From assembly GCA_002269645.1 (NCBI GenBank), contig NIVC01003461.1, forward strand, positions 32,756 through 96,755: a stretch of DNA of 64,000 bases. The letters run 5' to 3'. Position 1 is the first letter of the stretch, and every line of letters begins with the position of its first letter. The notes beneath the pieces are model-generated. The model ran no database searches and was not told where the DNA came from. It was given only the letters and a program-made list of their open reading frames with translations. A program made the translations under genes and the position numbers. Shown here piece by piece: positions 6,501 to 33,900 of the stretch. The DNA is from Macrostomum lignano. Its lineage: Eukaryota.

Positions 6501-7009
6501 CATTACCCCACTATGAACCCCGCCGCCAGGGCCTGCACCTCCGCCTGCAGCTGGACGGCTCAATAGCGAACATTTTCCGCGCCGCTACCGGACAATTCCG
6601 CCGGCTTGGCTATCGCTGTGCGACATTGTGGTGATCATAGCGCTGATTCCGCTATTGACTAAGCTGGTATTCCCCTGGCTTGAGCGGCGGGGCAAGCACC
6701 CCAGTCTGGCTACGCAGATCCTATTAGGCATGTCCATCGCCTTGGCCTCCGTGCTCTGCGCCGGCGTGCTCGAGTCCTACCGGCTCAGCGTCCTGTGGGG
6801 CAATTCAACCAATCTCTGGCCTGTGGACTATGTTCAACAGCAAATTGGCAATATGAATTATACGGCAGCTAATGTTAGCATAATGTGGCAGGTGCCCCAG
6901 TACTGCCTGATGGGTACGGCCGAAGCTTTTATGCCCGTTGCCTGCCTGCGGCTGGCCTTTCAGGTGAGCTGACTGTGGCCCAGCTGGTGTAGAAATCCAC
7001 ATGGCACAG

Positions 7010-7161
7010 CTGACAGACAGACAGACACAGACAGACAGACAGACAGACACTAAGACACTAAGACACTAAGACACACAGACAGACAGACAGACAGACAGAC
7101 ACTAAGACACTAAGACACTAAGACAGGCGGACAAGTCAGACAGACAGACAGACAGACACTA

Positions 7162-7226
<65 letters not shown>

Positions 7227-7262
7227 CTAAGACACTAAGACACTAAGACAGGCGGACAAGTC

Positions 7263-7325
<63 letters not shown>

Positions 7326-7433
7326 TCAGACAGACAGACAGACAGACAGACACTAAGACACTAAGACACTAAGACAGGTGGACAAGTCAGACAGACAGAC
7401 AGACAGACACTAAGACACTAAGACAGGCGGACA

Positions 7434-7498
<65 letters not shown>

Positions 7499-7723
7499 GG
7501 CGGACAAGTCAGACAGACAGACAGACACTAAGACACTAAGACACTAAGACACTAAGACAGGTGGACAAGTCAGACAGACAGACAGACAGACACTAAGACA
7601 GGCGGACAAGTCAGACAGACAGACAGACAGACACTAAGACAGGCGGACAAGTCAGACAGACAGACAGACAGACACTAAGACAGGCGGACAAGTCAGACAG
7701 ACAGACAGACAGGTGGACAAGTC

Positions 7724-7776
<53 letters not shown>

Positions 7777-7853
7777 GTAAGACACTAAGACAGGCGGACA
7801 AGTCAGACAGACAGACACTAAGACACTAAGACACTAAGACAGGCGGACAAGTC

Positions 7854-7906
<53 letters not shown>

Positions 7907-7983
7907 CTAAGACACTAAGACAGGCGGACAAGTCAGACAGACAGACACTAAGACACTAAGACACTAAGACAGGCGGACAAGTC

Positions 7984-8032
<49 letters not shown>

Positions 8033-8060
8033 CTAAGACACTAAGACAGGCGGACAAGTC

Positions 8061-8099
<39 letters not shown>

Positions 8100-8130
8100 T
8101 AGACAGACAGACAGGCGGACAAGTCAGACA
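7010..8130. repeat. Compound (GACA)n / gacactaa / ggcggacaagtca microsatellite in SLC15 intron 3
   Basis: Direct inspection. Confidence 0.96.
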
Positions 8131-9716
8131 CTACGGGTCTTTCGTAAGAGACACCATGAGGCTCCAATAAACCGAAAGACAGACTGAAAAACAGGCAAAG
8201 AAACAGGTTGGCAGGTCAAAGACAGACCGAGCAGTAGTCAAATCGAGCCAGAATGGACCAAAAGACAGGGCCATACAGGTGTAGTTGCGGTATAGGCAGG
8301 CCGACAACCCAGCAGGTATCTGTTGTCACCGCAGTCCTGCAGTAATTAACAGCCAAATCAAGTCAAGCACTGCAAACACACGCACACAGGGCGCGCCTCG
8401 CAACATGAAAGGCCTAATTACTGGCTTATTCTGGTTCACCTGCGGCTGCGGCAGCTTCGTAGGCGTGGCGCTGGTCTCGGGTCTGGCCGGGGCTGGCGTC
8501 TGGTTCCAGCCGTCCGAGCAGGGCAACCCGAACTGCCGCCTAGCCTGTTCCACTGATCCAACCCGGATTTGCGCCGAGTGCCACATGGATTTCTACTTCT
8601 ACCTACTCAGCGGCATACAGCTTGGCGGACTGCTGCTGTTTGCATTGCTCAGGTCGCGCTACCGACTGGCGACGTCTGTTGACGATTTCACGGCCGGCTC
8701 AGCCGCTGTTGGAGATGCTGTCAGCCAGATTAATAATAACGGGCCGAGGCTGCCCGGTTACAGCGCTAATAGGCGCAATGTGGACTTCTAAGGCTTTGAT
8801 AAGGCTTTGACTCCGTGTCTTTTGGGGGATGTACATTCGGTCAGGGCCGCTACACACCCCCTGTGTGACTGCTAGCTAGCTGACTAGCTGAAATCGATTC
8901 CATTAAAATATTTTTTTTCTACAATGTACTTATGTTAATTCTATTTCTCTACATATCTGTAGGCATTCTACCTTATTTTGTTTCTCATTATTCATCGACT
9001 TTTGATATCTTCTGTTCGATATCTCTTTCATCTCTACTTTGGTAGCTATTGGAAAATAGAGAAATAAGATGTGAATCCCAGCCTGTGTAGTTCTGCCACA
9101 AGTTCAGCTATGTACTAACCGCGGCCAGTTCTGCTTAACTTTTCCGAGAGCATTGGCTAGCGACTCTATTATGTCGGAAAGCTTATGTATATTTTGCTAT
9201 ATTTATTAAATACATTTTCATCAGTAACAATAATATTGCACTTGTTTCCAACTGGTATTATCAATTTATTCAGACTTTCAACCGCTTTCTTTCATTCTAT
9301 CTCAATCAGTTATTTTTTGTCAGATGCTATTAAACTGTGCAATACATTTTTCTACCGCTTCTTGACTATGTTTAATTGATTCTGTACACAAACTTTTCTA
9401 CAGGCTACAGTTTATTTAATCGTGTGAAGTAATGGCATGTGTTATGCAATCAAAATTTGTTACTAGCCAAAATCTATGTTTTGCTTTGCTGCGGCACTGT
9501 GCTATTGTTTTTTCTGGTGCTACCAATACACCGTATTCTCTGTCGTGTATGTGTAAAAAGATAATTACATTATATGGATTTGATTTCATTTTCTAATTGT
9601 TGAGTGTCTGCGCGTGTTGCTTCATTTCGGCTTTTTCTGTAGGGCAGATTAAGTATGGGTAAATTTTGTTATTCAAGTTAAGACTGGAATGGAATTTCTG
9701 CATTTGTTATGTCGGC

Positions 9717-10908
9717 TAATAGCACAGCCTCAAACCCCAGCTCAATCAGCACAGCCTCAACCCCAGCTCAATCAGCACAGTCTCAAACTCCAGCTCAATC
9801 AGCACAGCCTCAGATCCAGCTCAATCAGCACAGTCTCAAACCCCAGCTCAATCAGCAGTCTCAGACTCCAGTTCAATCAGCACAGCCTCAAACCCCAGCT
9901 CAATCAGCACAGCCTCAAACCCCAGCTCAATCAGCACAGCCTCAAACCCCAGCTCAATCAGCACAGTCTCAAACCCCAGCTCAATCAGCACAGTCTCAGA
10001 TCCAGCTCAATCAGCACAGTCTCAGATCCAGCTCAATCAGCACAGTCTCAGATCCAGCTCAATCAGCACAGTCTCAGATCCAGCTCAATCAGCACAGTCT
10101 CAGATCCAGCTCAATCAGCACAGTCTCAGATCCAGCTCAATCAGCACAGTCTCAGATCCAGCTCAATCAGCACAGTCTCAAACCCCAGCTCAATCAGCAC
10201 AGTCTCAGATCCAGCTCAATCAGCACTGTCTCAGATCCAGCTCAATCAGCACAGTCTCAGATCCAGCTCAATCAGCACAGTCTCAAACCCCAGCTCAATC
10301 AGCACAGTCTCAGATCCAGCTCAATCAGCACAGTCTCAGATCCAGCTCAATCAGCACAGTCTCAAACCCCAGCTCAATCAGCACAGTCTCAAACCCCAGC
10401 TCAATCAGCACAGTCTCAAACCCCAGTTCAATCAGCACAGTCTCAGATCCAGCTCAATCAGCACAGTCTCAGATCCAGTTCAATCAGCACAGTCTCAAAC
10501 CCCAGCTCAATCAGAAGTCTCAGACTCCAGTTCAATCAGCACAGTCTCAAACTCCAGCTCAATCAGCAGTCTCAGACTCCAGTTCAATCAGCACAGTCTC
10601 AAACCCCAGTTCAATCAGCACAGTCTCAAACCCCAGTTCAATCAGCACAGTCTCAAACCCCAGCTCAATCAGCACAGTCTCAAACCCCAGCTCAATCAGC
10701 ACAGCCTCAAACCCCAGCTCAATCAGCAGTCTCAGACTCCAGTTCAATCAGCACAGTCTCAAACCCCAGCTCAATCAGCACAGTCTCAAACCCCAGCTCA
10801 ATCAGCACAGCCTCAAACCCCAGCTCAATCAGCACAGTCTCAAACCCCAGCTCCATCAGTACAGTCTCAGACTCCAGTTCAATCAGCAGTCTCAGACCCA
10901 GCTCAACT
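9717..10908. repeat. 27-bp intergenic minisatellite (ccagctcaatcagcacagtctcaaacc and variants) directly upstream of PTCD3
   Basis: Tandem 27-bp units with 24-bp variants; open in two frames. Confidence 0.96.
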
Positions 10909-12311
10909 GAGATAACACTCTGTACACTCCGCAGTACACCAAAGGACGAATGCTGCTTCAACGCGCCCTGAGGCTGGCAGCCAGCGGCAGCGGAGGCGGT
11001 CGGTGCTGCCGTCAGCGGCGGAGCTTCCAGGCTAGCCGAGTCCCGGATCCCCAGCTGCGCAACCAGCTGCCCAGTCCAGTTGAACGCGACGAGTTCACGG
11101 TGTTGAAATGCCTAGCCGGCACCGTCAGCGTAGAGGCTGACGCCGTTCCGCACTACTCCATCGACGATAGCTTGTTCCTGCGCTACCGCCAAGGCGACCT
11201 GATGCTGGCCAGACGGTCTGGCCGAAACTTGGCCAGGCGATTCCTGCAATCGGACGCGGCACAGCTGGCCCAGTTGAACATGGAGTGCCCGCCTGTGCCG
11301 GCTTGGCGGCCGCTGAGATCTGTTGACGGGCTGGAGAACAACGAGGAGAATCTGAGATTGCTAATCGATTTGGAACAGGTGGATCTGAGCTGGCGGATGT
11401 ACAATAAGCTGATTAGTGACGGTTCCGGAGTTAGCGACGATGTCAAGTGAGGATTCTGCTGCATATATGCCCGCTATTTCATGCTTGATGTTATACAGTT
11501 TGCGCGTATGGCAGTGCGCGCTTGTAACAGTTTTGCGCGTATTGCAATGCGCGCTTATAACAGTTTTGCGCGTATGGCAGTGCGCCCTTATAACAGGCGC
11601 CTTTATTCCGTAGCGCCCTTATACAAATGCGCTCATTGATACATTAGTTTCGGGGGCTTCGGTCTCAACTCAACTCGGTGTTCGCCCCCTACCTCGCTCC
11701 GCAGGCAGAGCCTACTGGAGCTGCTCGCCTATCACGCCGGCTCGGATCCGCCGCTCCGCGACATCAGCCCGGAGGAGATCTACTTCGCCGATCGGCCCCT
11801 CGTTGCCCCGGCCATGGCCGAGCTGGCGGCCGCCTGGACGGCTTCGGACAATCCGGCCCGAGCCGTCTATCGCAGTCTCGCCCAGCCAGTCAGCCTGGCC
11901 GCCAAAGCTGCTATGCTGAAGGCCCACTGCCGGCATGGCGCCTATGCCGAATGCTTGGATCTGTACGCTGAGGTGGCCGAAGATCCCCAGCTGGACGCCG
12001 AGAGCCACGTTGCCGCCCTGCTAGCCGTTGGCGCGCACCGCCGCAGCTGGCCGGCCGTTCTGGCCGCCTTCCGCCGGTTGCCCGGCCAACCGGACGCCAG
12101 CGCCTATCGGCATTGCTGTCCGGCCTGGCCCTGGCCAAGGATGCGCCAGACGGTGGGCGAGCGAAACTGGTGTGCAGTCTGCTGGCCGAGATGCGCGAGC
12201 GTGGGGTGGAGACTCGGCTTAGTCTGGCCACCGGCACTGCCGCACTGCGGGCTGCCTACGCCGATCAGCTCAAGAATTCTCTGCTTGATAAGTGAGTTTG
12301 TCTGGAAGATA

Positions 12312-12985
12312 CTCATTTGCAGGTGATAGATTAGGGGTGAGATTCTCATCTAATTCTCATTTGCAGGTGCTAGATTAGGGGTGAGATTCTCATCTAAGTC
12401 TCATTTGCAGGTGCTAGATTAGGGGTGAGATTCTCATCTAAGTCTCATTTGCAGGTGCTAGATTAGGGGTGAGATTCTCATCTAAGTCTTCAATTTGCAG
12501 GTGATAGATTAGGGATGAGATTCTCATCTAAGTCTCTTATTTGCAGGTGATGGATTAGGGGTGAGATCTCATCTAAGTCTCTCATTTGCAGTGATAGATT
12601 AGGGATGAGATTCTCATCTAAGCCTCTCATTTGCAGGTGCTAGATTAGGGGTGAGATTCTCATCTAAGTCTCTCATTTGCAGGTGATGGATTAGGGATGA
12701 GATTCTCATCTAAGCCTCTCATTTGCAGGTGATAGATTAGGGGTGAGATTCTCATCTAAGTCTCCCATTTGCAGGTCATAGATTAAGGGTGAGATTCTCA
12801 TCTAAGGCTCTCATTTGCAGGTGATAGATAAGGGTGAGATTCTCATCTAAGTCTCATTTGCAGGTGATAGATAAGGGTGAGATTCTCATCTAAGTCTCAT
12901 TTGCAGGTGATAGATCTAGGGGTGAGATTCTCATCCAAGTCTCCCATTTGCAGGTGACGAATTACGGTAGGGGTGAGATTCTTAT
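12312..12985 (+). repeat. ~44-bp intronic minisatellite (ctcatttgcaggtgatagattaggggtgagattctcatctaagt), about 15 units, PTCD3 intron 2
   Basis: Tandem units of 44-46 bp. Confidence 0.95.
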
Positions 12986-13789
12986 CTGTAGAGTCTGCCA
13001 GTTGTTGAGAATAGACCTGTGGCTGACCCAAGCCTCCCATTAGCCTAACCCTACATTGTACCCAACCCCGTCACCCCAGGCTCCAAGGCCCAACCGAGTG
13101 GCTGTCGAACCCGGGCCTGCCCCAGGCTGCCCGGCCGGCCTGCTGCCGTCTCTGCTGGCCGACCTGTGCTCGAATCCGCCCGATCCGCTGGACACCGCCA
13201 GTCCGGACGACCTGGCCTTCTTCCCCACAGCTGCCTACCTGGCCTGCCGGGTCTACGCCAGCCGGGCCCTGAGCGAGCAGCTCGATTCGTTGCTGCACTC
13301 CGGCGCTTTTGTGTCCACTCTGGGCACCTTCAAAGAGCGTCGCATAGTGTACGAATATCACCTGTTGAATCTGCTCACCGATCGGGGCGCCGATTTAGAT
13401 GCTGCCATTAGTTACTATTCGGATCGGATCGAGCCGTCTGGCGTTGCTATGCTCAGCCATCTGATCCGGCTGATGCGAAAGTGCGTAGCTAAGCAGGCCG
13501 TGCACCGGCTGCCCGGCCTCATGGCTCGGTGCTTGCAGTTTGCCGACTCACCAATCCCAACATATTGGCGCCCGCAAAGCTTTCTATCGGTGCGCTGAAA
13601 TTGTTGAAGAAATGTTTGCTGATCAGCATCCGGCTGTCCGAGATCCCCAGTTTATGGCCGAACTGCGCAGGTCTCTGGCCGCTTCTCAGATGTGCTCAAC
13701 AATGAATTCGTGTACGATCGGAGGCGGCGACGGGACGATGCGGTGAGATTTTTATGGGGGATTTTGAGAGGATGGAGAGTTAGGAGAGA

Positions 13790-14600
13790 GGAACGGGAGA
13801 GTGACGAGAAAGGAACGGAAGAGTGACGAGAGAGAAACGGAGAGTGACGAGAGAGAAACGGGAGAGTGACAAGAGAGAAACAGAGAGTGACCAGAGAGGA
13901 ACGGAAGGGTGACGAGAGAGGAACGGGAGAGTGACGAGGGAGGAACGGGAGAGTGACCAGAGAGGAACGGAGAGTGACGAGGGAGGAACGGTAGAATGAC
14001 GAGAGGAGCGGGAGAGTGACGAGAGAGGAACGGAAGGGTGACGAGAGAGGAACGGGAGAGTGACGAGGGAGGAACGGGAGAGTGACCAGAGAGGAACGGG
14101 AGAGTGACGAGGGAGGAACGGTAGAATGACGAGAGGAGCGGGAGAGTGACGAGAGAGGAACGGTAGAATGACGAGAGGAGCGGGAGAGTGACGAGAGAGG
14201 AACGGTAGAATGACGAGAGGAGCGGGAGAGTGACGAGAGAGGAACGGTAGAATGACGAGAGGAGCGGGAGAGTGACGAGGGAGGAACGGGAGAGTGACGA
14301 GAGAGGAACGGTAGAATGACGAGAGGAGCGGGAGAGTGACGAGAGAGGAACGGTAGAATGACGAGAGGAGCGGGAGAGTGACGAGAGAGGAACGGTAGAA
14401 TGACGAGAGGAGCGGGAGAGTGACGAGGGAGAACGGTAGAATGACGAGAGAGCGGAGAGTGACGAGAGAGGAACGGTAGAATGACGAGAGGAGCGGAGAG
14501 TGACGAGAGAGGAACGGTAGAATGACGAGAGGAGCGGGAGAGTGACGAGAGAGGAACGGTAGAATGACGAGAGGAGCGGAGAGTGACGAGAAGAGGGATG
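13790..14600. repeat. Purine-rich 42-bp minisatellite (two ~21-bp halves) in PTCD3 intron 3
   Basis: Unit gggagagtgacgagagaggaacggtagaatgacgagaggagc. Confidence 0.95.
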
Positions 14601-15029
14601 AGCAGGGCAGCAAAGGGAAGAAGGCAAGCAGGAATCGAGGAATTCAGACAGTCCAAGTATTTTATTCAATCCAACCCGAGCCCCTGAACTCTCCGCCATC
14701 CAGCTGCAGATCAGCAGCATCCAGTCGGAGATGACGTCTGACCACGCGGCCACCCTGATCCGCCTGGCCTCGCAGCTCCCGGCCGACTCGGACAGAGAGC
14801 AGGCGCTGCGCCTTGCTAACCAGCTGGACAAGTGCCTGACAGATAAGCGAGTGTCCAGCCTAAGCTACTGCCTGGCTTTGCTAGAACTGGCCGCCAAAAA
14901 TGAGACAGAGCCGCCTAGCTATGAGCAGAGGGCCGCCTGCCTAGCCGTGATTGAGCTGTTGGACAGGACGGCTCACGAATTTCAGGTTAGATACAGTTAA
15001 CAATTATCGCATTTTCGATAGTAGTGTTT

Positions 15030-15390
15030 NNNNNNNNNNNNNNNNNNNNNNNNNNNNNNNNNNNNNNNNNNNNNNNNNNNNNNNNNNNNNNNNNNNNNNN
15101 NNNNNNNNNNNNNNNNNNNNNNNNNNNNNNNNNNNNNNNNNNNNNNNNNNNNNNNNNNNNNNNNNNNNNNNNNNNNNNNNNNNNNNNNNNNNNNNNNNNN
15201 NNNNNNNNNNNNNNNNNNNNNNNNNNNNNNNNNNNNNNNNNNNNNNNNNNNNNNNNNNNNNNNNNNNNNNNNNNNNNNNNNNNNNNNNNNNNNNNNNNNN
15301 NNNNNNNNNNNNNNNNNNNNNNNNNNNNNNNNNNNNNNNNNNNNNNNNNNNNNNNNNNNNNNNNNNNNNNNNNNNNNNNNNNNNNNNNNT
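15030..15390. other. Assembly gap (361 N)
   Basis: Run of N bases. Confidence 1.
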
Positions 15391-16928: not shown

Positions 16929-18186
16929 TTCGGTTGGGGAGAAAGTTCTTGCAGTTTCTAGAACTTTCTGTCAAACTGAGTTTTTTTAAAACAAAAAGCC
17001 AATTAAGAAACAAAATGATCACTATCACAATCTATCACCTTCTGCCATTTTTGGGCAGACTCATAATACTGTCACTGTAAAATTTCTCTGGCTTTGAAGT
17101 GAAAAAGTTGTTCAGCCAGTTATCGAGCTCTTCATTATCAGCGAAGGTTTTGTTGTTCAAGGCGTTGGCCAGAGACAAAAACAGGTGATAGTCGCTTGGT
17201 GCCAAGTCTGGTGAATACAGTGGATGGGGCACCAATTCCCAGCCAAGGTCCAATAGCTTTTGGCGAGTCACCCTAGCAGTGTGTGGACGAGCCTTATCAT
17301 GGAGGAATCGTACCGGGCCATGGTTCGGACGCTTCTGTGTGATGGCGGCGGCCAATCAGTCCAGCTGTTGGCAGTATAGGTTGGCCGTAATCGATGTGTT
17401 GGTGGCAGCAGTTCGTAGTACATGACGCCCTTGCAGTCCCACCACACACACAGCATGACCTTGCGTGGGTGGAGTCCGGCCTTTGACTGCAGCTCAGGCG
17501 TCGCGTCAGCATCAACCCATAATTGTCGACGTTTGATGTTGACGTACAGGCACCACTTTTCATCGCCCGTAATGATGGACTTCAGCCAGTTGTGCGTGCG
17601 CCTGTAGGAGAGGAGAGAAGTGGCCAACTCTGCCCTGCGCTCCTTGTCCCAATCTGACAATTGGTGGGTACCCATTGTGCCAGCTTGTACACCTTGCCCA
17701 GCTGATGCAAATGACTGGTGACCATTTTATGGTCTACATCAAGGACTAGCACTAACTCACGCGTGGTTTGCCGAGGGTCAAGCCTCTACGAGTGTGCGCA
17801 GCCAGTCGTCATCAACCTTGGAGGGATGACCTGACCGGGACAAATCTTCGAGGTTAAAATTTCCCTGGTGAAACTGCGCAAACCAATCCTGGGCGGTGCG
17901 TTCAGATCGAGACACGGTACCCGCACCAAATGCAGCGTTGATACGGCGGCTGGATTCTGCAGCTGACAGTCCAGATTTGAAGTCATAGAGCAGGAGACCA
18001 CGAATATAGGCCCGAGAGAGATCCATAATGCTGGTGACTAGTGAGTAATCTCTTTGGTTTAAATAGCATGTTAGAATCACACACACCCACCCTCAATATA
18101 TACCCACACAGCCGGGCTCTGGAATGTTCCAGAAAGTTCTTAGACAGAAAGTTCTAGAAACCGCGGGAACTTTCTCCCCAACCGAA
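16929..18186 (-). mobile_element. Mariner (Tc1/mariner, DD34D-type) DNA transposon, 1258 bp, transposase decayed
   Basis: 44-bp TIRs (16929-16972 and 18143-18186, 3 mismatches) flanked by TA. Transposase from ATG 18026 to about 17035 has an HTH, ITGDEKW, HDKARPH and YSPDLAPSDYHLF. In-frame TGA at 17778 and a frameshift near 17400. Confidence 0.95.
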
Positions 18187-23325: not shown

Positions 23326-24744
23326 TCACTCTGGCCGCCAGTCGGCAGCCTTGGAGGCCACATCTCGCAGCCGGCAGTACAGGGCAATGTTGGACTGCAG
23401 AAAGCTCAGGCTAACGTAGTTCATGCCGTGCTTCTGGCAGAACTCCTTAACAAGAGGCGCCGCAGCTCTCAGGTGATGCCTAGGCAGCCTGGGATACAGG
23501 TGGTGCTCCAATTGGAACTGCAGTCCGCCGTGAAACCAGTCCATCCAGGTTGGACAATCGACATCCATAGTTGAGGCCACCTGAGATCGGATGAAATGGC
23601 CGCCGTCGTCAGAATCGACCGTGCCTAATCCGTTCTTATAGTCGCACACGGCCATGGGGAAATGGGAGATGCAGATTTGCACGTGGAGCAGGCCGGATAC
23701 GGCGTGGCTGAGCAACACGAAAGCAATTGTCTGCGGCCAGGTAGGCAGCTGGCAGGCCAAGGTAAGGTACCAGATAAAGAATGTTGACATGGAGACCAGC
23801 TCGGCTACTTGAAAGTAGCGCCGTTCCCGTTTCTGATTCAAAGCGATCAGGTGCTCGTAGGAGCGAATGTACAGGTAGAAGCGAGCCACGCACATCACCG
23901 GATAGAATACCAGGTGTTGCACTCGCATCAACAGCCGAAAGAATGGCTTGCGCTTGCCGTCGTAAAATGTAGATATCGGAGAGCTGAAGAACTCGTCAGT
24001 GATGGCTAGCAGCGGCATGTGCTGAATGTCCGGATCGTCTGTCACCGAGTTGGTGACCAGATGGTGGACATTGTGGTTGAGCTTCCACCAGCCGATGCTG
24101 ATGCCCAGCAGGGCGTTGCCAAGGAAGGCGGCCAGTCGGTGGTCGGTGAGGCGGTTGTGGGTCACAGCAGTGTGGCCCAGGTCGTGGCCAACAAAAGCCA
24201 GCTGCTGCAGATAGATGCCCAGGATACAGGCAGCCAGCACAACCCGGATAGGCCAGGCGGACTCTGGCGGGCACAGTACGCAGGCAACGGAGGCCGCTAG
24301 CAGGCAGAGAATGCGCAGCACCAGTCCCAGCTCCCAAGTTGGCTTAGTCTGAAACAGGCCCATCCGATGAAATTTGTCGCGCAAGGCGAAATAATCGCGG
24401 ACAATGGGGCTCTGCTGCTGCTGATGCTTGACATCGCCGCAGCTAAACGGCTGGTTGTCCGCCTCGTTAACATTGTCATCTAATTCGCATGGCTCAATCT
24501 GGCCAATACAATAAGTTGGCAGGAATTTTCTAACCAATTCCGGATGGTACATGCTGAACTGTACGCTGGCATCCTGGCCCCGACAGTTCTCTAAGGCCAG
24601 GGCGCCGCCCGGGTGGCGGCACAGAAAATTGGCAACGTCGTAGGCGCGACCGTCAATAGTGATGACGCAGCTGTTTGGCCGGCGTTTGGCCGCGTCAAGA
24701 TCCGATTGAGACAAACGGCGGCAGGACTGGCGGCCTTGGCACAT
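23326..24744 (-). CDS. Cytochrome b5-fused front-end fatty acid/sphingolipid desaturase (delta-8 sphingolipid desaturase-like), intronless, 472 aa
   Basis: HPGG heme motif; His boxes HDLGH, HNVHH and QLEHH; WWKLNHNVHHLVTN...DPDIQHMP; WFHGGLQFQLEHHLYPRLPRH. Confidence 0.93.
   Translation of the reverse strand: MCQGRQSCRRLSQSDLDAAKRRPNSCVITIDGRAYDVANFLCRHPGGALALENCRGQDASVQFSMYHPELVRKFLPTYCIGQIEPCELDDNVNEADNQPFSCGDVKHQQQQSPIVRDYFALRDKFHRMGLFQTKPTWELGLVLRILCLLAASVACVLCPPESAWPIRVVLAACILGIYLQQLAFVGHDLGHTAVTHNRLTDHRLAAFLGNALLGISIGWWKLNHNVHHLVTNSVTDDPDIQHMPLLAITDEFFSSPISTFYDGKRKPFFRLLMRVQHLVFYPVMCVARFYLYIRSYEHLIALNQKRERRYFQVAELVSMSTFFIWYLTLACQLPTWPQTIAFVLLSHAVSGLLHVQICISHFPMAVCDYKNGLGTVDSDDGGHFIRSQVASTMDVDCPTWMDWFHGGLQFQLEHHLYPRLPRHHLRAAAPLVKEFCQKHGMNYVSLSFLQSNIALYCRLRDVASKAADWRPE

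Positions 24745-25754: not shown

Positions 25755-25824
<70 letters not shown>
25755..25824. repeat. (GA)n microsatellite
   Basis: Direct inspection. Confidence 0.99.
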
Positions 25825-25825
<1 letters not shown>

Positions 25826-26210
25826 CCACTAAACCAGCGAAGGCAATTCGCAAGTGTTTGCAGACAAAGTGCCCCCCCATACGCTCCAAGGGTCGCAATA
25901 AATGCACTCCATGCCTTATCAAGTTCCACAAGGGTCAAGGGCGCCTGGGCATGCACTCAGCCCCGCATGGTCACTCGGGCAGAGAATGCAGTCAGAACGA
26001 AACTATCCTAAACTATTTAGCAATGTAAAATAAATAACGGAGAAACACAATGGTGTTCAGTGACACCTGTCAAAATATGTAGGACGAAACTTTATTAGGC
26101 AATTTTAAATGCAATTGATGTTCGAATGTAAAGTTTTTATAAATACAAAATCTAACATTCATAACATGAAATATAAATAGATATATATTTGCTCATTCTA
26201 TACTATACTA

Positions 26211-29166
26211 TCAATCACACTCATCCTCGTCACTGCTCACAATCCCGTCATAGAGCTGCTCTAATAATTTTAATCGTTGCAACAGGTTGCAGAACCACAT
26301 TCGATTCTCGGCAGACTTCAAAGCGACGGCAGACTTCAAAGTGTCGGCAGACTTCAAAGCGTCGGCAGACTTCAAAGTGTCGGCAGACTTCAAAGCGTCG
26401 GCAGACTTCAAAGCGTCGGCAGACTTCAAAGCGGCACGCGTTCTAATTAAAGCAGACATTAAAGCATCTACAGGATCGCCGCTCTCTGTTCCAACAAAAT
26501 CAGAAATAGTTGTTCGTAAAGCGTCGAAATTGGCACAAGCCGAGTCTAGCAGTTCGCTTAGGTAGGACGCGAACTCGCGACCTGCAAAACAGACGAATTT
26601 ACAGTATATTTTTGCCTACATATAGCTATGGAAATTAAGCAGTATTTGAGACTGCTAAAAAAGAATCCCCAAACAAGAAATCATTTTTTCTGCTAAGGTT
26701 TCCTAGATGGGCTGGGCTGCCGGAAACAAGTATCAATAATTCTCATTATTTAGGAAAGGTTCAACAGGCGCACCAGCAGACAGGTGCAAAAATAATTGCT
26801 TAAGTATTTAACTGGCCCTAATAAAATCAATTTGTACCTTTCAATTTGTGTAATTAATCTGCGGTTTGCGTCAGTCAGAAAAACCGATATTGTGCATGTG
26901 GTATTGGGTTGAACACGTCACTACGTCAACAGTTCAAAGTCAAAATAACAAAGTTTCTTTTAGCAATTTGCAGATATTTTGGAACTTTTAAACACGTCAG
27001 ACAAGATATATGAGAATTATGCTGAAGAGAAAAGTTCTCTTATCTGAGCAAATTTCGAAGTTATGAAATGTCAACGTTGCGAAAGCGACCAATTTTATGT
27101 TAACTACAATTTTGTTTAGCGGATGACTCTTCCTGAACCTGACTAATTCTATATTTTCCAGCAAAGGCTACACACCTTCTGGCTCCTCCGAGATTGCGTA
27201 ATCGCACAGAACTCCGTGATCGAAACCAACGCTATCCAAGAAGGCGTAAAACATGGCATAGCAACTGCCTAGCAACAGCGAATCCCAGCTGGCCCTAGCC
27301 AGACGAAGCTGACCTAACAGAAAGTGCAACAGATCCGAGTCCTTGGCCGACAGCAGGTGCACAAGCTCCGTAGGCGACAGTTGAGTCTGCAGCTGACGGA
27401 GCAGCTCCTGGCACCGCGGCGTCGGCGGAAGCAACAGCAACAGGCGAATAAAAGTGCAAATGAACTTTCTTTGAAGCTGACATTGATCGATTTGATGAAG
27501 CGAAGTCAGCTGAACTGATGGCCGCTTGCCAATCATGATTAGCAAAACTGTTGCCAATTCAATCAGAGCTTGGCGATCTACCAGCCATGCTGTACTCTTT
27601 GAGCACGTGCTCAACAGTTGCACACTAGCCAGGCACAGCAGCTGCCTCGATGTCAGCATTGCTGCGCCAATAGAATCCTCATCGTCAGAGTCTGACTCGT
27701 CGACAGAATTAACTAGAAATAAATTAGTAAAGTAAGGTCGAAGTCGTTAGCGGTCTCATAGTTTGATTATAACTGCTCCAAGATTGTAAACCAGCCTGTC
27801 TATCTGTCTGTCTATCTATCTGTCTATCCGTCTGTCTGTCTGTCTGTCCGTCTCTCTGTCTGTCTGTCCGTCTGTCTGTCTGTCTGTCTGTTCTTTAGCT
27901 TCAAAACTAGGCACTAGGAATTATGTTACACTACTGTCAGTAGACAAAGTGTTTTATCGCATTGACTGGACAACACGAGGTGACTTTACTTCAAGAACGA
28001 ATATTTTTACCTAAAAATTGAAACAACCTCAGCAGAACGCCAGTCAAAGCTTCCGGAAGCGACTCAGGAGCCTCTATCGCCCCGATGCGCTTTCGAAGAG
28101 CCAGCAGGCATTCGCCAAGAGCAAACGCTTCCAGACGATAGAGATCACTGCTTGAGTCAGGATCCTGCAGTTGGGAGAGACGCCAACAAACCAGCTCAGT
28201 CAGACGGCTGATATCTACGGATACGTCACCCTTTCGCTTGGCAATATCGAGCAAATCAGCCAGACCAATGGCCGCCAAGGGGTCAGTCGAATGTTGGCAT
28301 CGTATTAAAATTTCGTTAATTATTGCTTGGAGTAGCTCAACAGAGCGAGCCGCTTCGATAACCGTCTCAGTAACTGCGCGCAGACGCAGAGCATCGAACC
28401 AAGCTTCACTTTCAATGGCGAATCGTGCGCAATTGTGTTTAATGGCGCCAACTTGAATAAATCTTCCTGCTTCTAAATTTCCATTTTTAGAAATATTCTC
28501 CGATTGTGATTTACTTACAACGGCATCACTTCCGGTTTCTAGTTTGCTTTGAGCGGAGTCATTTCCGGTGTCCAATTTTCTTCCAACGGCATCGCTTCCG
28601 GTTTCTAATTTGGTAAGAACTGAGTCCTTTCCGGTGTCCAATTTACTTCCAACGGCATCACTTCCGGTTTCTAATTTGGTAAGAACTGAGTCCTTTCCGG
28701 TGTCCAATTTACTCCCAACGGCGTCACTTCCGGTTTCTAATTTGCATCGAACGGAGTCCTTTCCGGTGTCCAATTTACTTCCAACGGCGTCACTTCCGGT
28801 TGGTACCTTGCTTCTAAAAACATCACTTCCGGTTCCTAATCTACCTCCATTTAATGCATCACTTCTACTGGTGTCCAAATTACTTTCAACGGTGTCACTT
28901 CCGCTTTGTAATTTTGTTGCACTGGGTTCACTTCCGATGTTAAAATTGATTTTAACGACATCACTTCCTTGTTTTGTTCGAACGTGTTTCAAGTTACTTT
29001 TGCTGCTATTTCCAATCTCCTGCCTGACTGGCTTACGGAGTGCACAAGCCGAGTATTCGACTTTAACGCTGACTATTAAATCATCTTTCGAATTGTTGGC
29101 GGCGAGAAGTTTCTTACGCAAATCCGTCAGACAAAAGTGTTGCGCAACAATTTCGGCAGATTTTTC
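26211..29166 (-). CDS. LINS1: Protein Lines homolog (LINS1-like); exons 29166-28011, 27712-27176, 26581-26211; no genomic ATG for exon 1
   Basis: Junction phases join in frame (FLG|..V-NSVDESD, EPEG|..G-REF). FYAFLDSVGFDHGVLCDYAISEE matches the Lines motif GFDxxVLLDFLISxET. LSAKDSDLL resembles EQDDDML. The C-terminal LIRTRAALK...LLQRLKLLEQLY resembles Lines_C. Confidence 0.8.
26310..26435 (-). repeat. 18-bp coding minisatellite, 7 units (ALKSAD)n, inside the last Lines exon
   Basis: ggcagacttcaaag recurs every 18 bp from 26310 to 26418. Confidence 0.95.
27796..27891. repeat. (TCTG/TCTA)n microsatellite in Lines intron
   Basis: Direct inspection. Confidence 0.95.
28520..28980 (-). repeat. 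66-bp (2x33) coding repeat GSDAVGSKLDTGKDSVLTKLET in Lines exon 1
   Basis: The translation shows about 4 near-perfect 22-aa units plus degenerate 11-aa units. Confidence 0.9.
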
Positions 29167-29749
29167 CTGGAAAGAAGTTTTTTAGAAGAGCGTGATTAGA
29201 GAAAGCGCAAATAGTATTGTTAAAAGTGCCAAAAACTAGACACAAAATACATATAAACTAGGTGCAAAGATTAATGACCACAGTATACTACTAAACGTAG
29301 TTCGACAGAAATATTTTTATTGATAAATACAAGAAAGAAGAATAGAACTGCCCGCCCCCGTGAAAAATGGGAGCTACCGAGAAAATGCTGCACTGCCGGG
29401 GTCAGCTAGATTGACGAACGTTTTATTCGATAGATTTACCGACAACAAATCAATTTTTCCGCTTGTGAGCGCGCGGAAACAAAAGCGCCCTGGTGCGTAG
29501 CTCGTTAAGCAAATGTAGCTAATATAAAGGATACATATTTTTCTATTTTACTATAATTATACTATGCAAGCATATTAAAGGACAAGATAGAAGACTAACA
29601 ATTGTTTTGACAAGTTTGACAACAACAACACTATAATAACAGGAAGTATTTCAATAGATGGCATATTTATGCATACCGTATCCTGCATTAGGATTCAGTT
29701 GAGCGAGATGGACATTTGCGGAGTGGGGTTGCAAGGGACGAGGGTTTTA

Positions 29750-30890
29750 GGAGAGTGGGGTGGTTGGGGAGGGTCTCTTGCAGAGTGGGGTGGTTGGGCA
29801 GGGGGTTTTGGGAGAGGGGTGCTTGGAGAGGGTCTCTTGCAGAGTGGGGTGGTTGGGCAGGGGGTTTTGGGAGAGGGGTGCTTGGAGAGGGTCTCTTGCA
29901 GAGTGGGGTGGTTGGGGAGGGTCTCTTGCAGAGTGGGGTGGTTGGGGAGGGTCTCTTGCAGAGTGGGGTGGTTGGGGAGGGTCTCTTGCAGAGTGGGGTG
30001 GTTGGGGAGGGTCTCTTGCAGAGTGGGGTGGTTGGGCAGGGGGTTTTGGGAGAGGGGTGGTTGGGAAGGGTCTCTTGCAGAGTGGGGTGGTTGGGGAGGG
30101 TCTCTTGCAGAGTGGGGTGGTTGGGGAGGGTCTCTTGCAGAGTGGGGTGGTTGGGGAGGGTCTCTTGCAGAGTGGGGTGGTTGGGGAGGGTCTCTTGCAG
30201 AGTGGGGTGGTTGGGGAGGGTCTCTTGCAGAGTGGGGTGGTTGGGGAGGGTCTCTTGCAGAGTGGGGTGGTTGGGGAGGGTCTCTTGCAGAGTGGGGTGG
30301 TTGGGCAGGGGGTTTTGGGAGAGGGGTGGTTGGGAAGGGTCTCTTGCAGAGTGGGGTGGTTGGGGAGGGTCTCTTGCAGAGTGGGGTGGTTGGGGAGGGT
30401 CTCTTGCAGAGTGGGGTGGTTGGGGAGGGTCTCTTGCAGAGTGGGGTGGTTGGGGAGGGTCTCTTGCAGAGTGGGGTGGTTGGGGAGGGTCTCTTGCAGA
30501 GTGGGGTGGTTGGGGAGGGTCTCTTGCAGAGTGGGGTGGTTGGGCAGGGGGTTTTGGGAGAGGGGTGGTTGGGAAGGGTCTCTTGCAGAGTGGGGTGGTT
30601 GGGGAGGGTCTCTTGCAGAGTGGGGTGGTTGGGGAGGGTCTCTTGCAGAGTGGGGTGGTTGGGGAGGGTCTCTTGCAGAGTGGGGTGGTTGGGGAGGGTC
30701 TCTTGCAGAGTGGGGTGGTTGGGGAGGGTCTCTTGCAGAGTGGGGTGGTTGGGGAGGGTCTCTTGCAGAGTGGGGTGGTTGGGGAGGGTCTCTTGCAGAG
30801 TGGGGTGGTTGGGGAGGGGGTTGTGCAGAGTGAGGTGGTTGGGGAGGGTCTCTTGCAGAGTGGGGTGTCTGGGGAGGTGGTTTTACAGAG
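29750..30890. repeat. G-rich 30-bp minisatellite (ggggtggttggggagggtctcttgcagagt) with periodic variant units
   Basis: Tandem 30-bp units; source of the long spurious ORFs at 29669-31416. Confidence 0.97.
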
Positions 30891-30978
30891 GAGTAAAGTG
30901 CTGGATCAAACAGCATGCTCCAAGGTGGCAAAAGACGGATTTAATACTCTGCAACTCTCTCTCCCTCTCCCCAAGTCT

Positions 30979-33900
30979 CTAACGGCCCTTATTTCCGTCA
31001 TCATCATCCTCGGACTCGGAATCCGGCACCGTCCAGGTGCTGTCGTTGCGAACGCGCGAACTGGCTTGCGCCTCCGCCTGGGCCTCGGCAGCTTCGACAG
31101 CCATCCAGGCGGCCTCGTCGTCGTCATTATCGTTGACTCCCTTCGCCGAAAACTTGTCCTCGTCGTCGTCGTCACCGTCGTAGCCGCCGCGCGCCCAGCT
31201 GCTGCCGGCGGCTCCCCGGTCGCGCAGCTCCGCGGCCGCCCTGGACAGACGTTTGTGCGCGTCCGACTGCGTTTCGGACAGGCGATGGCCGGCGTTGGCC
31301 AGGAAAGCGCTGGCCGATTCGGCCAGGTTAGAGAGGCGGGCCAGGCTGGCCGTGTCAGACTTGTCGATGCGCTTGGCCTGTTGTTTTTGGCGAATCATGG
31401 AGAGACGCAAAGATAGGGGCATGCGCTTTGTAAACTACTTTTGATCAGTAGTATTGCTCTTATCAGGCTAAGAGAAGTTCAGCGGTTAACGTTAGTGCGC
31501 ACGCTAAGGCCTATTTTTCCTAATAAAAACTTCCCAATATCTGTAAACACTACTATCGAAAATGCCGATAATTGTTAACTGTATCTAACCTGAAATTCGT
31601 GAGCCGTCCTGTCCAACAGCTCAATCACGGCTAGGCAGGCGGCCCTCTGCTCATAGCTAGGCGTCTGTCTCATTTTGGCGGCCAGTTCTAGCAAAGCCAG
31701 GCAGTAGCTTAGGCTGGACACTCGCTTATCTGTCAGGCACTTGTCCAGCTGGTTAGCAAGGCGCAGCGCCTGCTCTCTGTCCGAGTCGGCCGGGAGCTGC
31801 GAGGCCAGGCGGATCAGGGTGGCCGCGTGGTCAGACGTCATCTCCGACTGGATGCTGCTGATCTGCAGCTGGATGGCGGAGAGTTCAGGGGCTCGGGTTG
31901 GATTGAATAAAATACTTGGACTGTCTGAATTCCTCGATTCCTGCTTGCCTTCTTCCCCTTTGCTGCCCTGCTCATCCCTCTTCTCGTCACTCTCCGCTCC
32001 TCTCGTCATTCTACCGTTCCTCTCTCGTCACTCTCCCGCTCCTCTCGTCATTCTACCGTTCCTCTCTCGTCACTCTCCCGCTCCTCTCGTCATTCTACCG
32101 TTCCTCTCTCGTCACTCTCCCGCTCCTCTCGTCATTCTACCGTTCCTCCCTCGTCACTCTCCCGCTCCTCTCGTCATTCTACCGTTCCTCTCTCGTCACT
32201 CTCCCGCTCCTCTCGTCATTCTACCGTTCCTCTCTCGTCACTCTCCCGCTCCTCTCGTCATTCTACCGTTCCTCTCTCGTCACTCTCCCGTTCCTCCCTC
32301 GTCACTCTCCCGCTCCTCTCGTCATTCTACCGTTCCTCTCTCGTCACTCTCCCGCTCCTCTCGTCATTCTACCGTTCCTCTCTCGTCACTCTCCCGCTCC
32401 TCTCGTCATTCTACCGTTCCTCTCTCGTCACTCTCCCGCTCCTCTCGTCATTCTACCGTTCCTCCCTCGTCACTCTCCCGTTCCTCTCTGGTCACTCTCC
32501 CGTTCCTCCCTCGTCACTCTCCCGTTCCTCTCTCGTCACCCTTCCGTTCCTCTCTCGTCACTCTCCCGCTCCTCTCGTCATTCTACCGTTCCTCCCTCGT
32601 CACTCTCCCGTTCCTCTCTGGTCACTCTCCCGTTCCTCCCTCGTCACTCTCCCGTTCCTCTCTCGTCACCCTTCCGTTCCTCTCTGGTCACTCTCCTGTT
32701 TCTCTCTTGTCACTCTCCCGTTTCTCTCTCGTCACTCTCCCGTTTCTCTCTCGTCACTCTTCCGTTCCTTTCTCGTCACTCTCCCGTTCCTCTCTCCTAA
32801 CTCTCCCATCCTCTCAAAATCCCCCATAAAAATCTCACCGCATCGTCCCGTCGCCGCCGCCTCCGATCGTACACGAATTCATTGTTGAGCACATCTGAGA
32901 AGCCGGCCAGAGACCTGCGCAGTTCGGCCATAAACTGGGGATCTCGGACAGCCGGATGCTGATCAGCAAACATTTCTTCAACAATTTCAGCGCACCGATA
33001 GAAAGCTTTGCCGGGCGCCAATATGTTGGGATTGGTGAGCTCGGCAAACTGCAAGCACCGAGCCATGAGGCCGGGCAGCCGGTGCACGGCCTGCTTAGCT
33101 ACGCACTTTCGCATCAGCCGGATCAGATGGCTGAGCATAGCAACGCCAGACGGCTCGATCCGATCCGAATAGTAACTAATGGCAGCATCTAAATCGGCGC
33201 CCCGATCGGTGAGCAGATTCAACAGGTGATATTCGTACACTATGCGACGCTCTTTGAAGGTGCCCAGAGTGGACACAAAAGCGCCGGAGTGCAGCAACGA
33301 ATCGAGCTGCTCGCTCAGGGCCCGGCTGGCGTAGACCCGGCAGGCCAGGTAGGCAGCTGTGGGGAAGAAGGCCAGGTCGTCCGGACTGGCGGTGTCCAGC
33401 GGATCGGGCGGATTCGAGCACAGGTCGGCCAGCAGAGACGGCAGCAGGCCCGGCCGGGCAGCCTGGGGCAGGCCCGGGTTCGACAGCCACTCGGTTGGGC
33501 CTTGGAGCCTGGGGTGACGGGGTTGGGTACAATGTAGGGTTAGGCTAATGGGAGGCTTGGGTCAGCCACAGGTCTATTCTCAACAACTGGCAGACTCTAC
33601 AGATAAGAATCTCACCCCTACCGTAATTCGTCACCTGCAAATGGGAGACTTGGATGAGAATCTCACCCCTAGATCTATCACCTGCAAATGAGACTTAGAT
33701 GAGAATCTCACCCTTATCTATCACCTGCAAATGAGACTTAGATGAGAATCTCACCCTTATCTATCACCTGCAAATGAGAGCCTTAGATGAGAATCTCACC
33801 CTTAATCTATGACCTGCAAATGGGAGACTTAGATGAGAATCTCACCCCTAATCTATCACCTGCAAATGAGAGGCTTAGATGAGAATCTCATCCCTAATCC

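What the first reader, a model, noticed from the sequence alone, without database searches (positions are those of the whole stretch)
28011..29200. Lines-like gene has no genomic start codon: ATG probably donated by a spliced leader
Seen: the 1156-nt first exon is open for 385 codons with no ATG. It starts right after a clean acceptor (cttctttccag|GAA AAA TCT, 29166) in phase 0, and the frame is closed by a TAA five codons upstream. The first in-frame ATG is about 400 codons downstream, in exon 2. I found no ATG-bearing upstream exon in 29200-29700. Established: flatworm spliced leaders end in AUG, which can act as initiator Met (shown in schistosomes). Inference: SL trans-splicing builds the ORF (M-EKSAEIVAQH...), so the gene would be untranslatable, or lose most of its N-terminal half, without trans-splicing.
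Basis: partly seen in the sequence, partly recalled or inferred. Interest (0 to 1): 0.82.

Follow-up and report, generated by a model that had tools for sequence, protein, structure and literature searches.

The report
Start codon supplied by spliced leader
A flatworm (Macrostomum lignano) gene has no start codon in the genome and most likely gets its AUG from the trans-spliced leader RNA, a mechanism already known in flatworms; a near-identical second copy of the gene reads ATG exactly where this copy has the splice acceptor.

Summary
The window is the last 64 kb of Macrostomum lignano contig NIVC01003461.1 (assembly Mlig_3_7). A three-exon minus-strand gene (29166..26211, 687 codons) begins right after cttctttccag|GAA. 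Its frame is closed by TAA five codons upstream. It has no in-frame ATG until codon 404, and 15 out-of-frame ATGs come before that one.

The M. lignano spliced leader (SL) is 35 nt and ends in ATG. The acceptor fits the published trans-splice motif [T/C]TNCAG. The public annotation starts the CDS at 29166, as expected from a pipeline that cuts transcripts at SL-read peaks. No ATG|GT donor lies within 1.8 kb upstream. I could not retrieve any SL-junction reads, so all support is indirect.

New finding: a 99%-identical copy on NIVC01001713.1 reads TTTCATG|GAA where the window reads TTTCCAG|GAA. That puts a genomic ATG at the codon the SL would supply. It is either a real CAG/ATG switch or an artefact of polishing the assembly with RNA-seq reads. 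Either way it supports the N-terminus MEKSAEIV.

The mechanism was shown in schistosomes in 2006, so novelty is low. "Lines-like" rests only on a sub-threshold Pfam motif hit.

The parts
29167..29177 (-). Trans-splice acceptor cttctttccag. It is a 9-nt pyrimidine run followed by AG, and it fits the M. lignano motif [T/C]TNCAG.
   Evidence: motif from PMC8629364. The paralogue L004 reads cttctttcATG here.
29182..29184 (-). In-frame TAA that closes the reading frame five codons upstream of the exon.
28011..29166 (-). Exon 1: 1156 nt, 385 codons plus 1 nt, with no in-frame ATG. It starts GAA AAA TCT (EKS...) and its donor is TAG|gtaaaa.
   Evidence: The annotated CDS start in GCA_002269645.1 maps to 29166.
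28509..28849 (-). Coding tandem repeat inside exon 1. The unit is 66 nt (22 aa, GSDAVGSKLDTGKDSVLTKLET-like), in about 5 copies.
27176..27712 (-). Exon 2, with acceptor atttctag| and donor GAAG|gtgtgt.
27657..27659 (-). First in-frame genomic ATG (codon 404). Fifteen out-of-frame ATGs precede it.
27183..27254 (-). The only family-like motif in the protein: MFYAFLDSVGFDHGVLCDYAISEE (residues 539-562). It is a weak match to Pfam LINES_N positions 303-326.
   Evidence: E 3e-4, 20.7 bits, cutoff 25; coordinates
26211..26581 (-). Exon 3, ending ...SSDEDECD and the stop TGA. It contains the 18-nt (SADALK) coding repeat at 26308-26433.
   Evidence: The paralogue has two fewer repeat units.
26091..26096 (-). 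AATAAA polyadenylation signal, about 115 nt after the stop codon.
29167..29751 (-). Outron or intercistronic DNA. It has no ATG|GT, and its seven ATGs open only short ORFs. It carries AATAAA signals at 29427 and 29321.
29752..30877 (-). Tandem array of a 30-nt unit (37.7 copies) between the upstream gene and the outron. It has no ATG on the gene strand and is shorter in the paralogue.
30979..30981 (-). Stop codon (TAG) of the upstream same-strand gene, which is mitoribosomal mS39/PTCD3-like (PF22330). ATTAAA lies at 30945-30940. This gene is a possible operon partner.

Best explanation
The gene's primary transcript lacks an initiator codon. That transcript starts either at its own promoter or as a read-through from the upstream mS39-like gene. 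The M. lignano SL RNA donates its 35-nt leader, whose last three bases are AUG, to the acceptor at 29167/29166. The mature mRNA then reads 5'-...UUGCAUG|GAAAAAUCU. The SL AUG is the first and only AUG ahead of the ORF and is in phase 0 with exon 1, so translation gives a 688-residue protein, MEKSAEIVAQH...DECD.

What is shown: the ATG-less open exon, the consensus acceptor in phase 0, the species and its SL sequence, the annotated 5' boundary, and the paralogue's ATG.

What is inferred: that SL is actually joined at 29166 in this copy and that its AUG is used for initiation.

The paralogue's ATG has two readings. It may be a genuine variant, meaning two near-identical copies encode the same N-terminus, one from a genomic AUG and one from the SL AUG. 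Or it may be SL-derived bases written into the assembly by RNA-seq polishing. Both readings point to the same N-terminus.
For: - Sequence: the ORF, acceptor, TAA and first ATG at codon 404 are as described. Fifteen out-of-frame ATGs make scanning to codon 404 implausible.
- Organism: the window is contig NIVC01003461.1 of GCA_002269645.1, and NIVC00000000 is M. lignano Mlig_3_7 (PMC5730564).
- SL: it ends in ATG and 30-39% of genes are trans-spliced. Its only ATG is at nt 33-35.
- Acceptor: the species motif is [T/C]TNCAG and the window reads TTCCAG.
- Annotation: the CDS runs 29166..26211. A 5'-partial ORF that starts 5 codons after an in-frame stop requires a transcript model starting at 29166-29168. 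That is what the TBONE pipeline produces when it cuts at SL-read peaks.
- Other acceptors: five other pyrimidine-rich AGs upstream would give SL-AUG ORFs of only 4-48 codons, against 688 for this one.
- Paralogue: L004 has ATG at the same codon, opening a 392-codon genomic ORF, MEKSAEIV....
- Precedent: in S. mansoni the SL AUG is in frame in 28% of trans-spliced mRNAs and more than 40 cDNAs need it (Cheng et al. 2006, as cited in PMC9851317, and PMC12582326).
Against: - No RNA read or transcript with an SL-GAAAAATC junction could be retrieved. The protein databases hold only a 163-aa exon-2 ORF.
- The annotation's 5' boundary is the same in both copies, and SL-trimmed reads would map equally to both. 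Expression and trans-splicing of this particular copy are therefore not shown.
- The annotated product is 675 aa, whereas my model of the window copy gives 687 aa. 675 aa is the length my model gives for the L004 copy. This hints that the transcript model came from the other copy.
- If the paralogue's ATG is real, the window copy could be a redundant allele that has lost its start codon.
Confidence: 0.72

Rival explanations
1. The window copy is a redundant duplicate or haplotig that lost its start codon (ATG to CAG). It is not translated into the full protein, and the functional gene is the NIVC01001713.1 copy with a genomic ATG. On this view the resemblance to a trans-splice acceptor is incidental.
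For: The paralogue has ATG at this codon. Mlig_3_7 is highly redundant: about 46% of scaffolds are removed by purge_dups. The annotated product length matches the paralogue rather than the window copy.
Against: - The change is a specific 2-nt substitution. It yields CAG after a 9-nt pyrimidine run present in both copies, matches the species motif, and is in the phase that restores the same ORF through the SL ATG.
- About 4 dinucleotide differences occur in 9.3 kb. Such an outcome by chance has a probability of about 5e-5.
- The 687-codon ORF is intact. The copies differ by 3 amino-acid changes and one in-frame repeat indel.
- The annotated transcript boundary lies after the ATG even in the paralogue. 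A conventional mRNA with a 5'UTR would not give that boundary.
Confidence: 0.12
2. A cis-spliced upstream exon supplies the ATG. One candidate is ATG at 29688 with the donor ACG|GTATGC at 29676, which would add M-Q-D-T. An exon further upstream is another possibility.
For: ATGs at 29688 and 29664 have phase-0 GT dinucleotides downstream. Sequence alone cannot exclude use of a weak donor.
Against: - The RNA-seq-guided annotation has no such exon and starts at 29166.
- The candidate donors do not fit the consensus GT[G/A]AG.
- No ATG|GT occurs in 29167-31000, and the 1.1-kb repeat array has no ATG.
- The paralogue lacks the AG yet keeps the ORF, with ATG at exactly this codon. That is not expected if the preceding codons came from another exon.
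Confidence: 0.05
3. The two copies are really identical, and one of the two states is an assembly error. The specific version with the window wrong would mean the true sequence is ATG in both copies.
For: Mlig_3_7 is a PacBio/Canu assembly polished with Pilon, and only 64% of its bases are error-free by REAPR. Other dinucleotide differences exist between the copies.
Against: No known process would write CAG over ATG. The known risk runs the other way: RNA-seq reads carrying ...CATG from the SL were used for polishing, and they would turn CCAG into CATG. That direction belongs to the best explanation, not to this rival.
Confidence: 0.04
4. Translation starts without any AUG donation, either at a near-cognate codon near the 5' end of exon 1 (for example CTG or TTG at codons 13-16) or at Met404. 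The Met404 start would give a 284-residue C-terminal protein.
For: TTG at 29121 opens the mechanical ORF listed. A 163-aa product starting at Met404 exists in UniRef.
Against: - 403 codons stay open upstream of Met404 (chance about 4e-9), and the coding repeats keep the frame.
- Fifteen out-of-frame ATGs precede Met404.
- The 163-aa entry ends in intron 2 (EEPEGV*), so it is an unspliced-ORF call and not evidence for a protein.
Confidence: 0.03

Closest known systems
Flatworm SL 3'-terminal AUG used as initiator methionine (Schistosoma mansoni; Cheng, Cohen, Ndegwa & Davis 2006, J Biol Chem 281:733)
   Same: The SL ends in AUG. The acceptor lies in phase 0 at the first codon of an ORF that has no genomic ATG of its own. 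The SL AUG becomes codon 1.
   Different: - The species is a free-living macrostomid with a different SL sequence (35 nt).
- Use of the AUG was not tested here, whereas in schistosomes it was shown experimentally.
- Here a near-identical paralogue carries a genomic ATG at the same codon.
M. lignano SL trans-splicing and operons (Wudarski et al. 2017, PMC5730564; Ustyantsev & Berezikov 2021, PMC8629364)
   Same: - The acceptor motif [T/C]TNCAG is the same.
- The gene boundary sits at the splice site, as in the TBONE annotation.
- The upstream same-strand gene ends 1.8 kb away. That is 0.69 kb after subtracting the tandem array, which is under the authors' repeat-adjusted 1-kb operon threshold.
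   Different: In the passages I read, those papers do not discuss dependence of individual ORFs on the SL ATG. Operon membership of this gene pair was not checked against their tables.
slORFs: ORFs created by SL addition (slORFfinder, PMC9851317)
   Same: The reading frame exists only on the trans-spliced mRNA.
   Different: slORFs in nematodes, ascidians and Euglena mostly use near-cognate NUG codons and often give alternative ORFs. Here a canonical AUG would open the gene's main and only long ORF.
Lines / LINS1 family (Pfam LINES_N PF14694, LINES_C PF14695)
   Same: A 24-residue motif, FLDSVGFDHGVLCDYAISEE, aligns to LINES_N positions 303-326.
   Different: The score is below the Pfam cutoff. 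There is no LINES_C match, and no homologue was detected among 1.84 billion representative proteins. The N-terminal half consists of lineage-specific 22-aa repeats.

Membership tests
SL-AUG-dependent mRNAs of flatworms | The host has SL trans-splicing with an SL that ends in AUG. | tested here: met
   The window is M. lignano NIVC01003461.1. The SL is CGGTCTCTTACTGCGAAGACTCAATTTATTGCATG, and its only ATG is at nt 33-35.
SL-AUG-dependent mRNAs of flatworms | A 3' splice acceptor at the 5' end of the ORF with no cis donor partner upstream (an outron). | tested here: met
   cttctttccag| at 29177-29167 fits [T/C]TNCAG. There is no ATG|GT and no consensus donor in 29167-31000. The annotation has no upstream exon.
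SL-AUG-dependent mRNAs of flatworms | The SL AUG is in frame with the main ORF, and no genomic in-frame ATG lies at or near the 5' end. | tested here: met
   The acceptor is in phase 0. TAA lies 5 codons upstream and the first in-frame ATG is codon 404.
SL-AUG-dependent mRNAs of flatworms | SL-mRNA junction observed in RNA. | not testable with these tools
   No read or transcript collection for M. lignano could be reached. The only proxy is that the annotated CDS and transcript start falls exactly at the acceptor in both copies.
SL-AUG-dependent mRNAs of flatworms | Initiation at the SL AUG demonstrated. | not testable with these tools
   This needs ribosome profiling, N-terminal proteomics or reporter assays.
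Lines / LINS1 | LINES_N domain (PF14694) at or above the gathering score. | tested here: not met
   On a 125-aa fragment the match is 20.7 bits against a cutoff of 25, covering 24 of 351 profile positions. The full-length protein and a 389-aa fragment gave no hit.
Lines / LINS1 | LINES_C domain (PF14695). | tested here: not met
   No match at E up to 10.
Lines / LINS1 | Detectable homology to family members. | tested here: not met
   phmmer against 1.84 billion representatives returned only the gene's own exon-2 ORF and repeat-driven hits. Two word-index searches returned nothing.
M. lignano operon (Ustyantsev & Berezikov criteria) | Adjacent same-strand genes, the downstream one SL trans-spliced, with a repeat-adjusted distance under 1 kb. 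| tested here: inconclusive
   The mS39-like gene's stop is at 30979 and the acceptor at 29166, which is 1813 nt apart. Subtracting the 1126-nt array leaves 687 nt. Trans-splicing of the downstream gene is inferred, and co-transcription was not tested.

The most novel reading that the evidence does not exclude
The CAG/ATG difference between the two 99%-identical copies is real. If so, one genome holds both states of the same gene: in one copy the initiator codon is outsourced to the spliced leader, and in the other it is genome-encoded. The two states would be separated by two adjacent base changes, possibly through an AAG intermediate that is still an acceptor. That would be a caught-in-the-act example of how genes gain or lose dependence on the SL AUG. 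It would also offer a natural allele pair for testing whether an SL-AUG mRNA (TMG-capped, 32-nt leader) is translated differently from a conventional mRNA.
Probability: 0.4. Interest if true: 0.55.

Novelty: new member of a known kind. Interest (0 to 1): 0.33.

Why it matters
For annotation: in flatworm genomes, ORFs that look 5'-truncated can be complete once the SL ATG is added. Gene finders and databases that ignore this will either call them partial, or call spurious short products such as the 163-aa UniRef entry here.

For assembly quality: if the paralogue's ATG comes from RNA-seq polishing, the same artefact may have destroyed trans-splice acceptors elsewhere in Mlig_3_7.

For biology: if the ATG is real, the pair shows that an SL-donated and a genome-encoded start codon are interchangeable by a 2-nt step.

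Tried and rejected
- Rfam scan of the whole window: no family reached its gathering score, so no SL RNA gene or other known RNA lies here. A search for the SL 3' 15-mer with up to 2 mismatches gave no hit.
- SL 3' suffixes of 7 nt or more, in the window and in L004: 13 hits in about 171 kb of searched strand, about what chance gives, and none at a gene start. This gave no local signature of RNA-polishing artefacts.
- Protein searches for orthologues or transcript-derived proteins: two word-index searches found nothing. The exhaustive HMMER search found only the gene's own exon-2 ORF and low-complexity repeat hits. Exact look-ups of seven candidate products, with and without M and of both copy types, were absent from the collection.
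I therefore could not enlarge the sample of M. lignano gene starts to test the artefact idea.
- Supplementary tables of PMC5816591 and PMC5173321 searched for LINS/LINS1/PTCD3: nothing found.
- 'An annotated CDS starting at a non-ATG codon proves trans-splicing': rejected as a general rule. The PTR2 gene's annotated CDS also starts at a non-ATG codon, and it does not follow an AG. The argument used here is narrower: the boundary falls exactly after the AG and 5 codons after an in-frame stop.
- A second copy of the gene inside the window: none. The region 26001-29760 is unique in the window.
Full report
**1. The observation**

On the minus strand the sequence reads ...ctcttcTAAaaaacttctttccag|GAAAAATCTGCCGAA. 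The AG is at 29168-29167 and the first exon base is 29166.

- The frame of GAA is closed by TAA at 29184-29182, five codons upstream.
- It then stays open to the donor TTTTTAG|gtaaaa at 28011/28010. That is 1156 nt, or 385 codons plus one base.
- There is no Met codon in those 385 codons. About five are expected from position-specific base composition, so P is about 0.007.
- The stop-to-stop frame of 396 codons cannot be chance, so the exon is coding.
- Splicing to 27712-27176 and 26581-26211 keeps one frame of 687 codons, ending ...SSDEDECD-TGA. An AATAAA follows about 115 nt later.
- The first in-frame ATG is codon 404 (27659-27657). Fifteen out-of-frame ATGs, each opening an ORF of 2-36 codons, precede it. 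A scanning ribosome on an mRNA without a 5'-proximal in-frame AUG would be very unlikely to reach it.

**2. Where the window comes from**

A single-exon desaturase gene in the window (23326-24744) is found on two contigs of GCA_002269645.1. One of these contigs, NIVC01003461.1, contains the window exactly. The window is its last 64 kb.

NIVC00000000 is the Macrostomum lignano Mlig_3_7 assembly (PMC5730564).

M. lignano has a single 35-nt spliced leader, CGGTCTCTTACTGCGAAGACTCAATTTATTGCATG. Depending on the study, 30-39% of its genes are trans-spliced (PMC8629364; PMC5730564; PMC5173321). The SL's only ATG is its last three bases. [quoted passage not shown]

**3. Evidence that the SL is joined at 29166**

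- The top motif at M. lignano trans-splice acceptors is [T/C]TNCAG, placed at the junction. The window has TTCCAG after a 9-nt pyrimidine run.
- The public annotation of this contig places the CDS at exactly 29166..26211 (coordinate mapping).
- That annotation is transcript-based. Reads containing the SL were trimmed and mapped, and the TBONE pipeline cut transcripts at those peaks. ORFs were then called with TransDecoder.
- A 5'-partial ORF that starts five codons after an in-frame stop requires a transcript model beginning at 29166-29168, which is at the splice boundary.
- This is not simply a habit of the annotation. The PTR2 gene in the window also has a non-ATG CDS start, but not after an AG. 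The coincidence with the acceptor is therefore informative.
- Of the pyrimidine-rich AGs in the 330 nt upstream, none gives an SL-AUG ORF longer than 48 codons. The 29166 acceptor gives 688 codons.
- There is no ATG|GT anywhere between 29167 and 31000, and the 1.1-kb 30-mer array has no ATG at all.
- Two upstream ATGs (29688, 29664) have phase-0 GT dinucleotides. These are poor donors and are not used in the annotation.

I could not obtain the direct proof, which would be SL-junction reads. No tool reached M. lignano reads or transcripts. The protein collections hold only a 163-aa call of the unspliced exon-2 ORF.

**4. The paralogue**

The second contig, NIVC01001713.1 (locus L004), carries the same three genes: mS39-like, this gene and the desaturase. 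Over the 750 nt around the start the two copies are 99% identical. At the acceptor, however, the window reads CTTCTTTCCAG|GAAAAA and L004 reads CTTCTTTCATG|GAAAAA.

In L004, ATG occupies exactly the codon the SL would supply. It opens a genomic ORF, MEKSAEIVAQH..., of 392 codons up to the intron, or 676 codons after splicing.

The copies are homologous over about 9.3 kb, with about 85 single and about 4 dinucleotide differences. A random dinucleotide change landing on -3/-2 and producing AT has a probability of roughly 5e-5. Chance is therefore not the explanation. Two explanations remain.

(a) A real variant under selection. For example, an AAG ancestor that was still an acceptor could have become CAG in one copy and ATG in the other.

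(b) An artefact. Mlig_3_7 was polished with Pilon using Illumina DNA and also RNA-seq mapped by STAR (PMC5730564 Methods). Reads carrying the SL 3' end ...GCATG across the junction could overwrite CCAG with CATG.
   - Against (b): the SL also differs from the genome at -5, -8 and -11, and those positions are unchanged in L004.
   - For (b): both changed bases match the SL, and only one of two equally mappable copies is affected, as a primary-alignment bias would produce.

I cannot decide between them. My estimate is about 40% for a real variant (as in the section on the most novel reading) and a comparable share for the artefact, with the remainder for neither. Both readings support MEKSAEIV as the N-terminus and argue against an upstream coding exon. 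Reading (b) would itself be indirect evidence for SL-junction reads.

One further point: in L004 the annotated CDS starts at GAA, after the ATG. That fits a transcript model cut at an SL peak and does not fit a conventional mRNA with a 5'UTR.

**5. Caveats about this copy**

The reads that defined the boundary map equally to both copies. The annotated product is 675 aa at both loci, but my model of the window copy gives 687 aa and of L004 gives 675 aa. The difference is two SADALK repeat units, or 36 nt. The transcript model therefore probably derives from the L004-type sequence.

Expression of the window copy is unproven. It could be a redundant duplicate or haplotig, since about 46% of Mlig_3_7 scaffolds are redundant. 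Its ORF is intact, but the copies are too similar (3 amino-acid differences) for that to say much.

**6. Mechanism**

Shown: the ATG-less ORF, the consensus acceptor in phase 0, the SL ending in AUG, the annotated boundary and the paralogue's ATG.

Inferred: the SL RNA (109 nt, donor GTAAG) is trans-spliced to 29166. The mRNA then has a 32-nt leader followed by AUG-GAA. Initiation at that AUG yields a 688-aa protein.

The pre-mRNA may be polycistronic. The same-strand mS39-like gene stops at 30979 with ATTAAA at 30945. The gap to the acceptor is 1813 nt, of which 1126 nt is a tandem array. The repeat-adjusted 687 nt is under the 1-kb operon threshold used for this species. AATAAA signals at 29427 and 29321 lie 150-260 nt upstream of the acceptor. 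Co-transcription was not tested.

**7. What the protein is**

'Lines-like' is weakly founded. Only a 125-aa fragment gives a LINES_N match: 24 residues, 20.7 bits against a 25-bit cutoff, E 3e-4. There is no LINES_C match, and no homologue among 1.84 billion representative proteins.

The protein has four recognisable regions:
- an N-terminal region of about 110 residues;
- about five 22-aa repeats;
- a helical-looking region carrying the FDHGVL motif;
- seven SADALK repeats and an acidic tail.

I treat it as a fast-evolving protein with a Lines_N-like motif, not as an established family member.

**8. Comparison with known work, and novelty**

The mechanism is the one shown for Schistosoma mansoni by Cheng et al. 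2006: the SL AUG is in frame in 28% of trans-spliced mRNAs, and more than 40 cDNAs need it (cited in PMC9851317; PMC12582326). All reported flatworm SLs end in AUG.

For M. lignano, the SL, its terminal ATG and widespread trans-splicing are published, and the GenBank annotation already places the boundary at this acceptor. This is therefore a new member of a known kind.

The less ordinary element is the CAG/ATG pair. It is either a natural example of switching between an outsourced and a genome-encoded start codon, or a polishing artefact that may affect other acceptors in a widely used assembly.

**9. Verdict**

- Observation: confirmed.
- Interpretation: supported by convergent but indirect evidence, with confidence of about 0.7 that the SL supplies the AUG for this copy.
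- Novelty: low.
- Interest: 0.33.

Noticed in passing
window 1512-15029 (+) vs 45092-31545 (-); N run 15030-15389: There is a 13.5-kb inverted duplication at 98.9% identity. It carries PTR2-transporter and mS39-like genes on both arms, and the left arm stops at a scaffold gap. The same contig also holds two inverted copies of the PNO1 gene. This may be a real palindrome or a haplotig joined in inverted orientation during scaffolding.
   Followed up: partly
window 29752-30877: A tandem array of a 30-nt unit (37.7 copies, 91% matches, C-rich on the gene strand) sits between the mS39-like gene and the outron. The array is shorter in the paralogous contig.
   Followed up: partly
window 26308-26433 and 28509-28849: The gene contains in-frame coding tandem repeats of 18 nt (SADALK, 7 copies) and 66 nt (22 aa, about 5 copies). 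The 18-nt array differs by two units (36 nt) between the two genome copies. The annotated product length (675 aa) matches the shorter copy at both loci.
   Followed up: partly
UniRef protein P0001 (= window 27168-27659, minus strand): A 163-aa database protein, MLTSRQ...EEPEGV, is simply the exon-2 ORF from the first genomic ATG read through into intron 2. It is probably a spurious product caused by ignoring the SL ATG and intron 2.
   Followed up: yes
window 23326-24744 (-): A single-exon gene encodes a 472-aa cytochrome-b5-fused fatty-acid desaturase (PF00173 + PF00487). It lies 1.5 kb downstream of the gene on the same strand and is identical in protein sequence on both contigs.
   Followed up: partly
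window 17038-18092 (-): There are several adjacent ORF fragments whose translations look like a mariner/Tc1-type transposase, broken by frame changes. This is probably a decayed transposon. It lies in the part of the window that has no counterpart in the paralogous contig, because homology ends near window 20435.
   Followed up: no
window 53440-56946 (+): A 1169-codon open frame lies in a 67% GC block, with a 151-aa ORF just upstream (52973-53428). It looks like a retrotransposon gag-pol. No exactly matching annotated product is on record.
   Followed up: partly
window 29297-29321 (-): The outron of the window copy has an AATAAA at 29321 that the paralogue lacks. The paralogue has a 4-nt deletion and three substitutions clustered within 25 nt. 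This cluster is the nearest copy-specific marker to the acceptor.
   Followed up: no
window 25755-25824 and 27796-27891: There are two long microsatellites: (AG)35 downstream of the gene, and (CTGT)24 inside intron 1.
   Followed up: no
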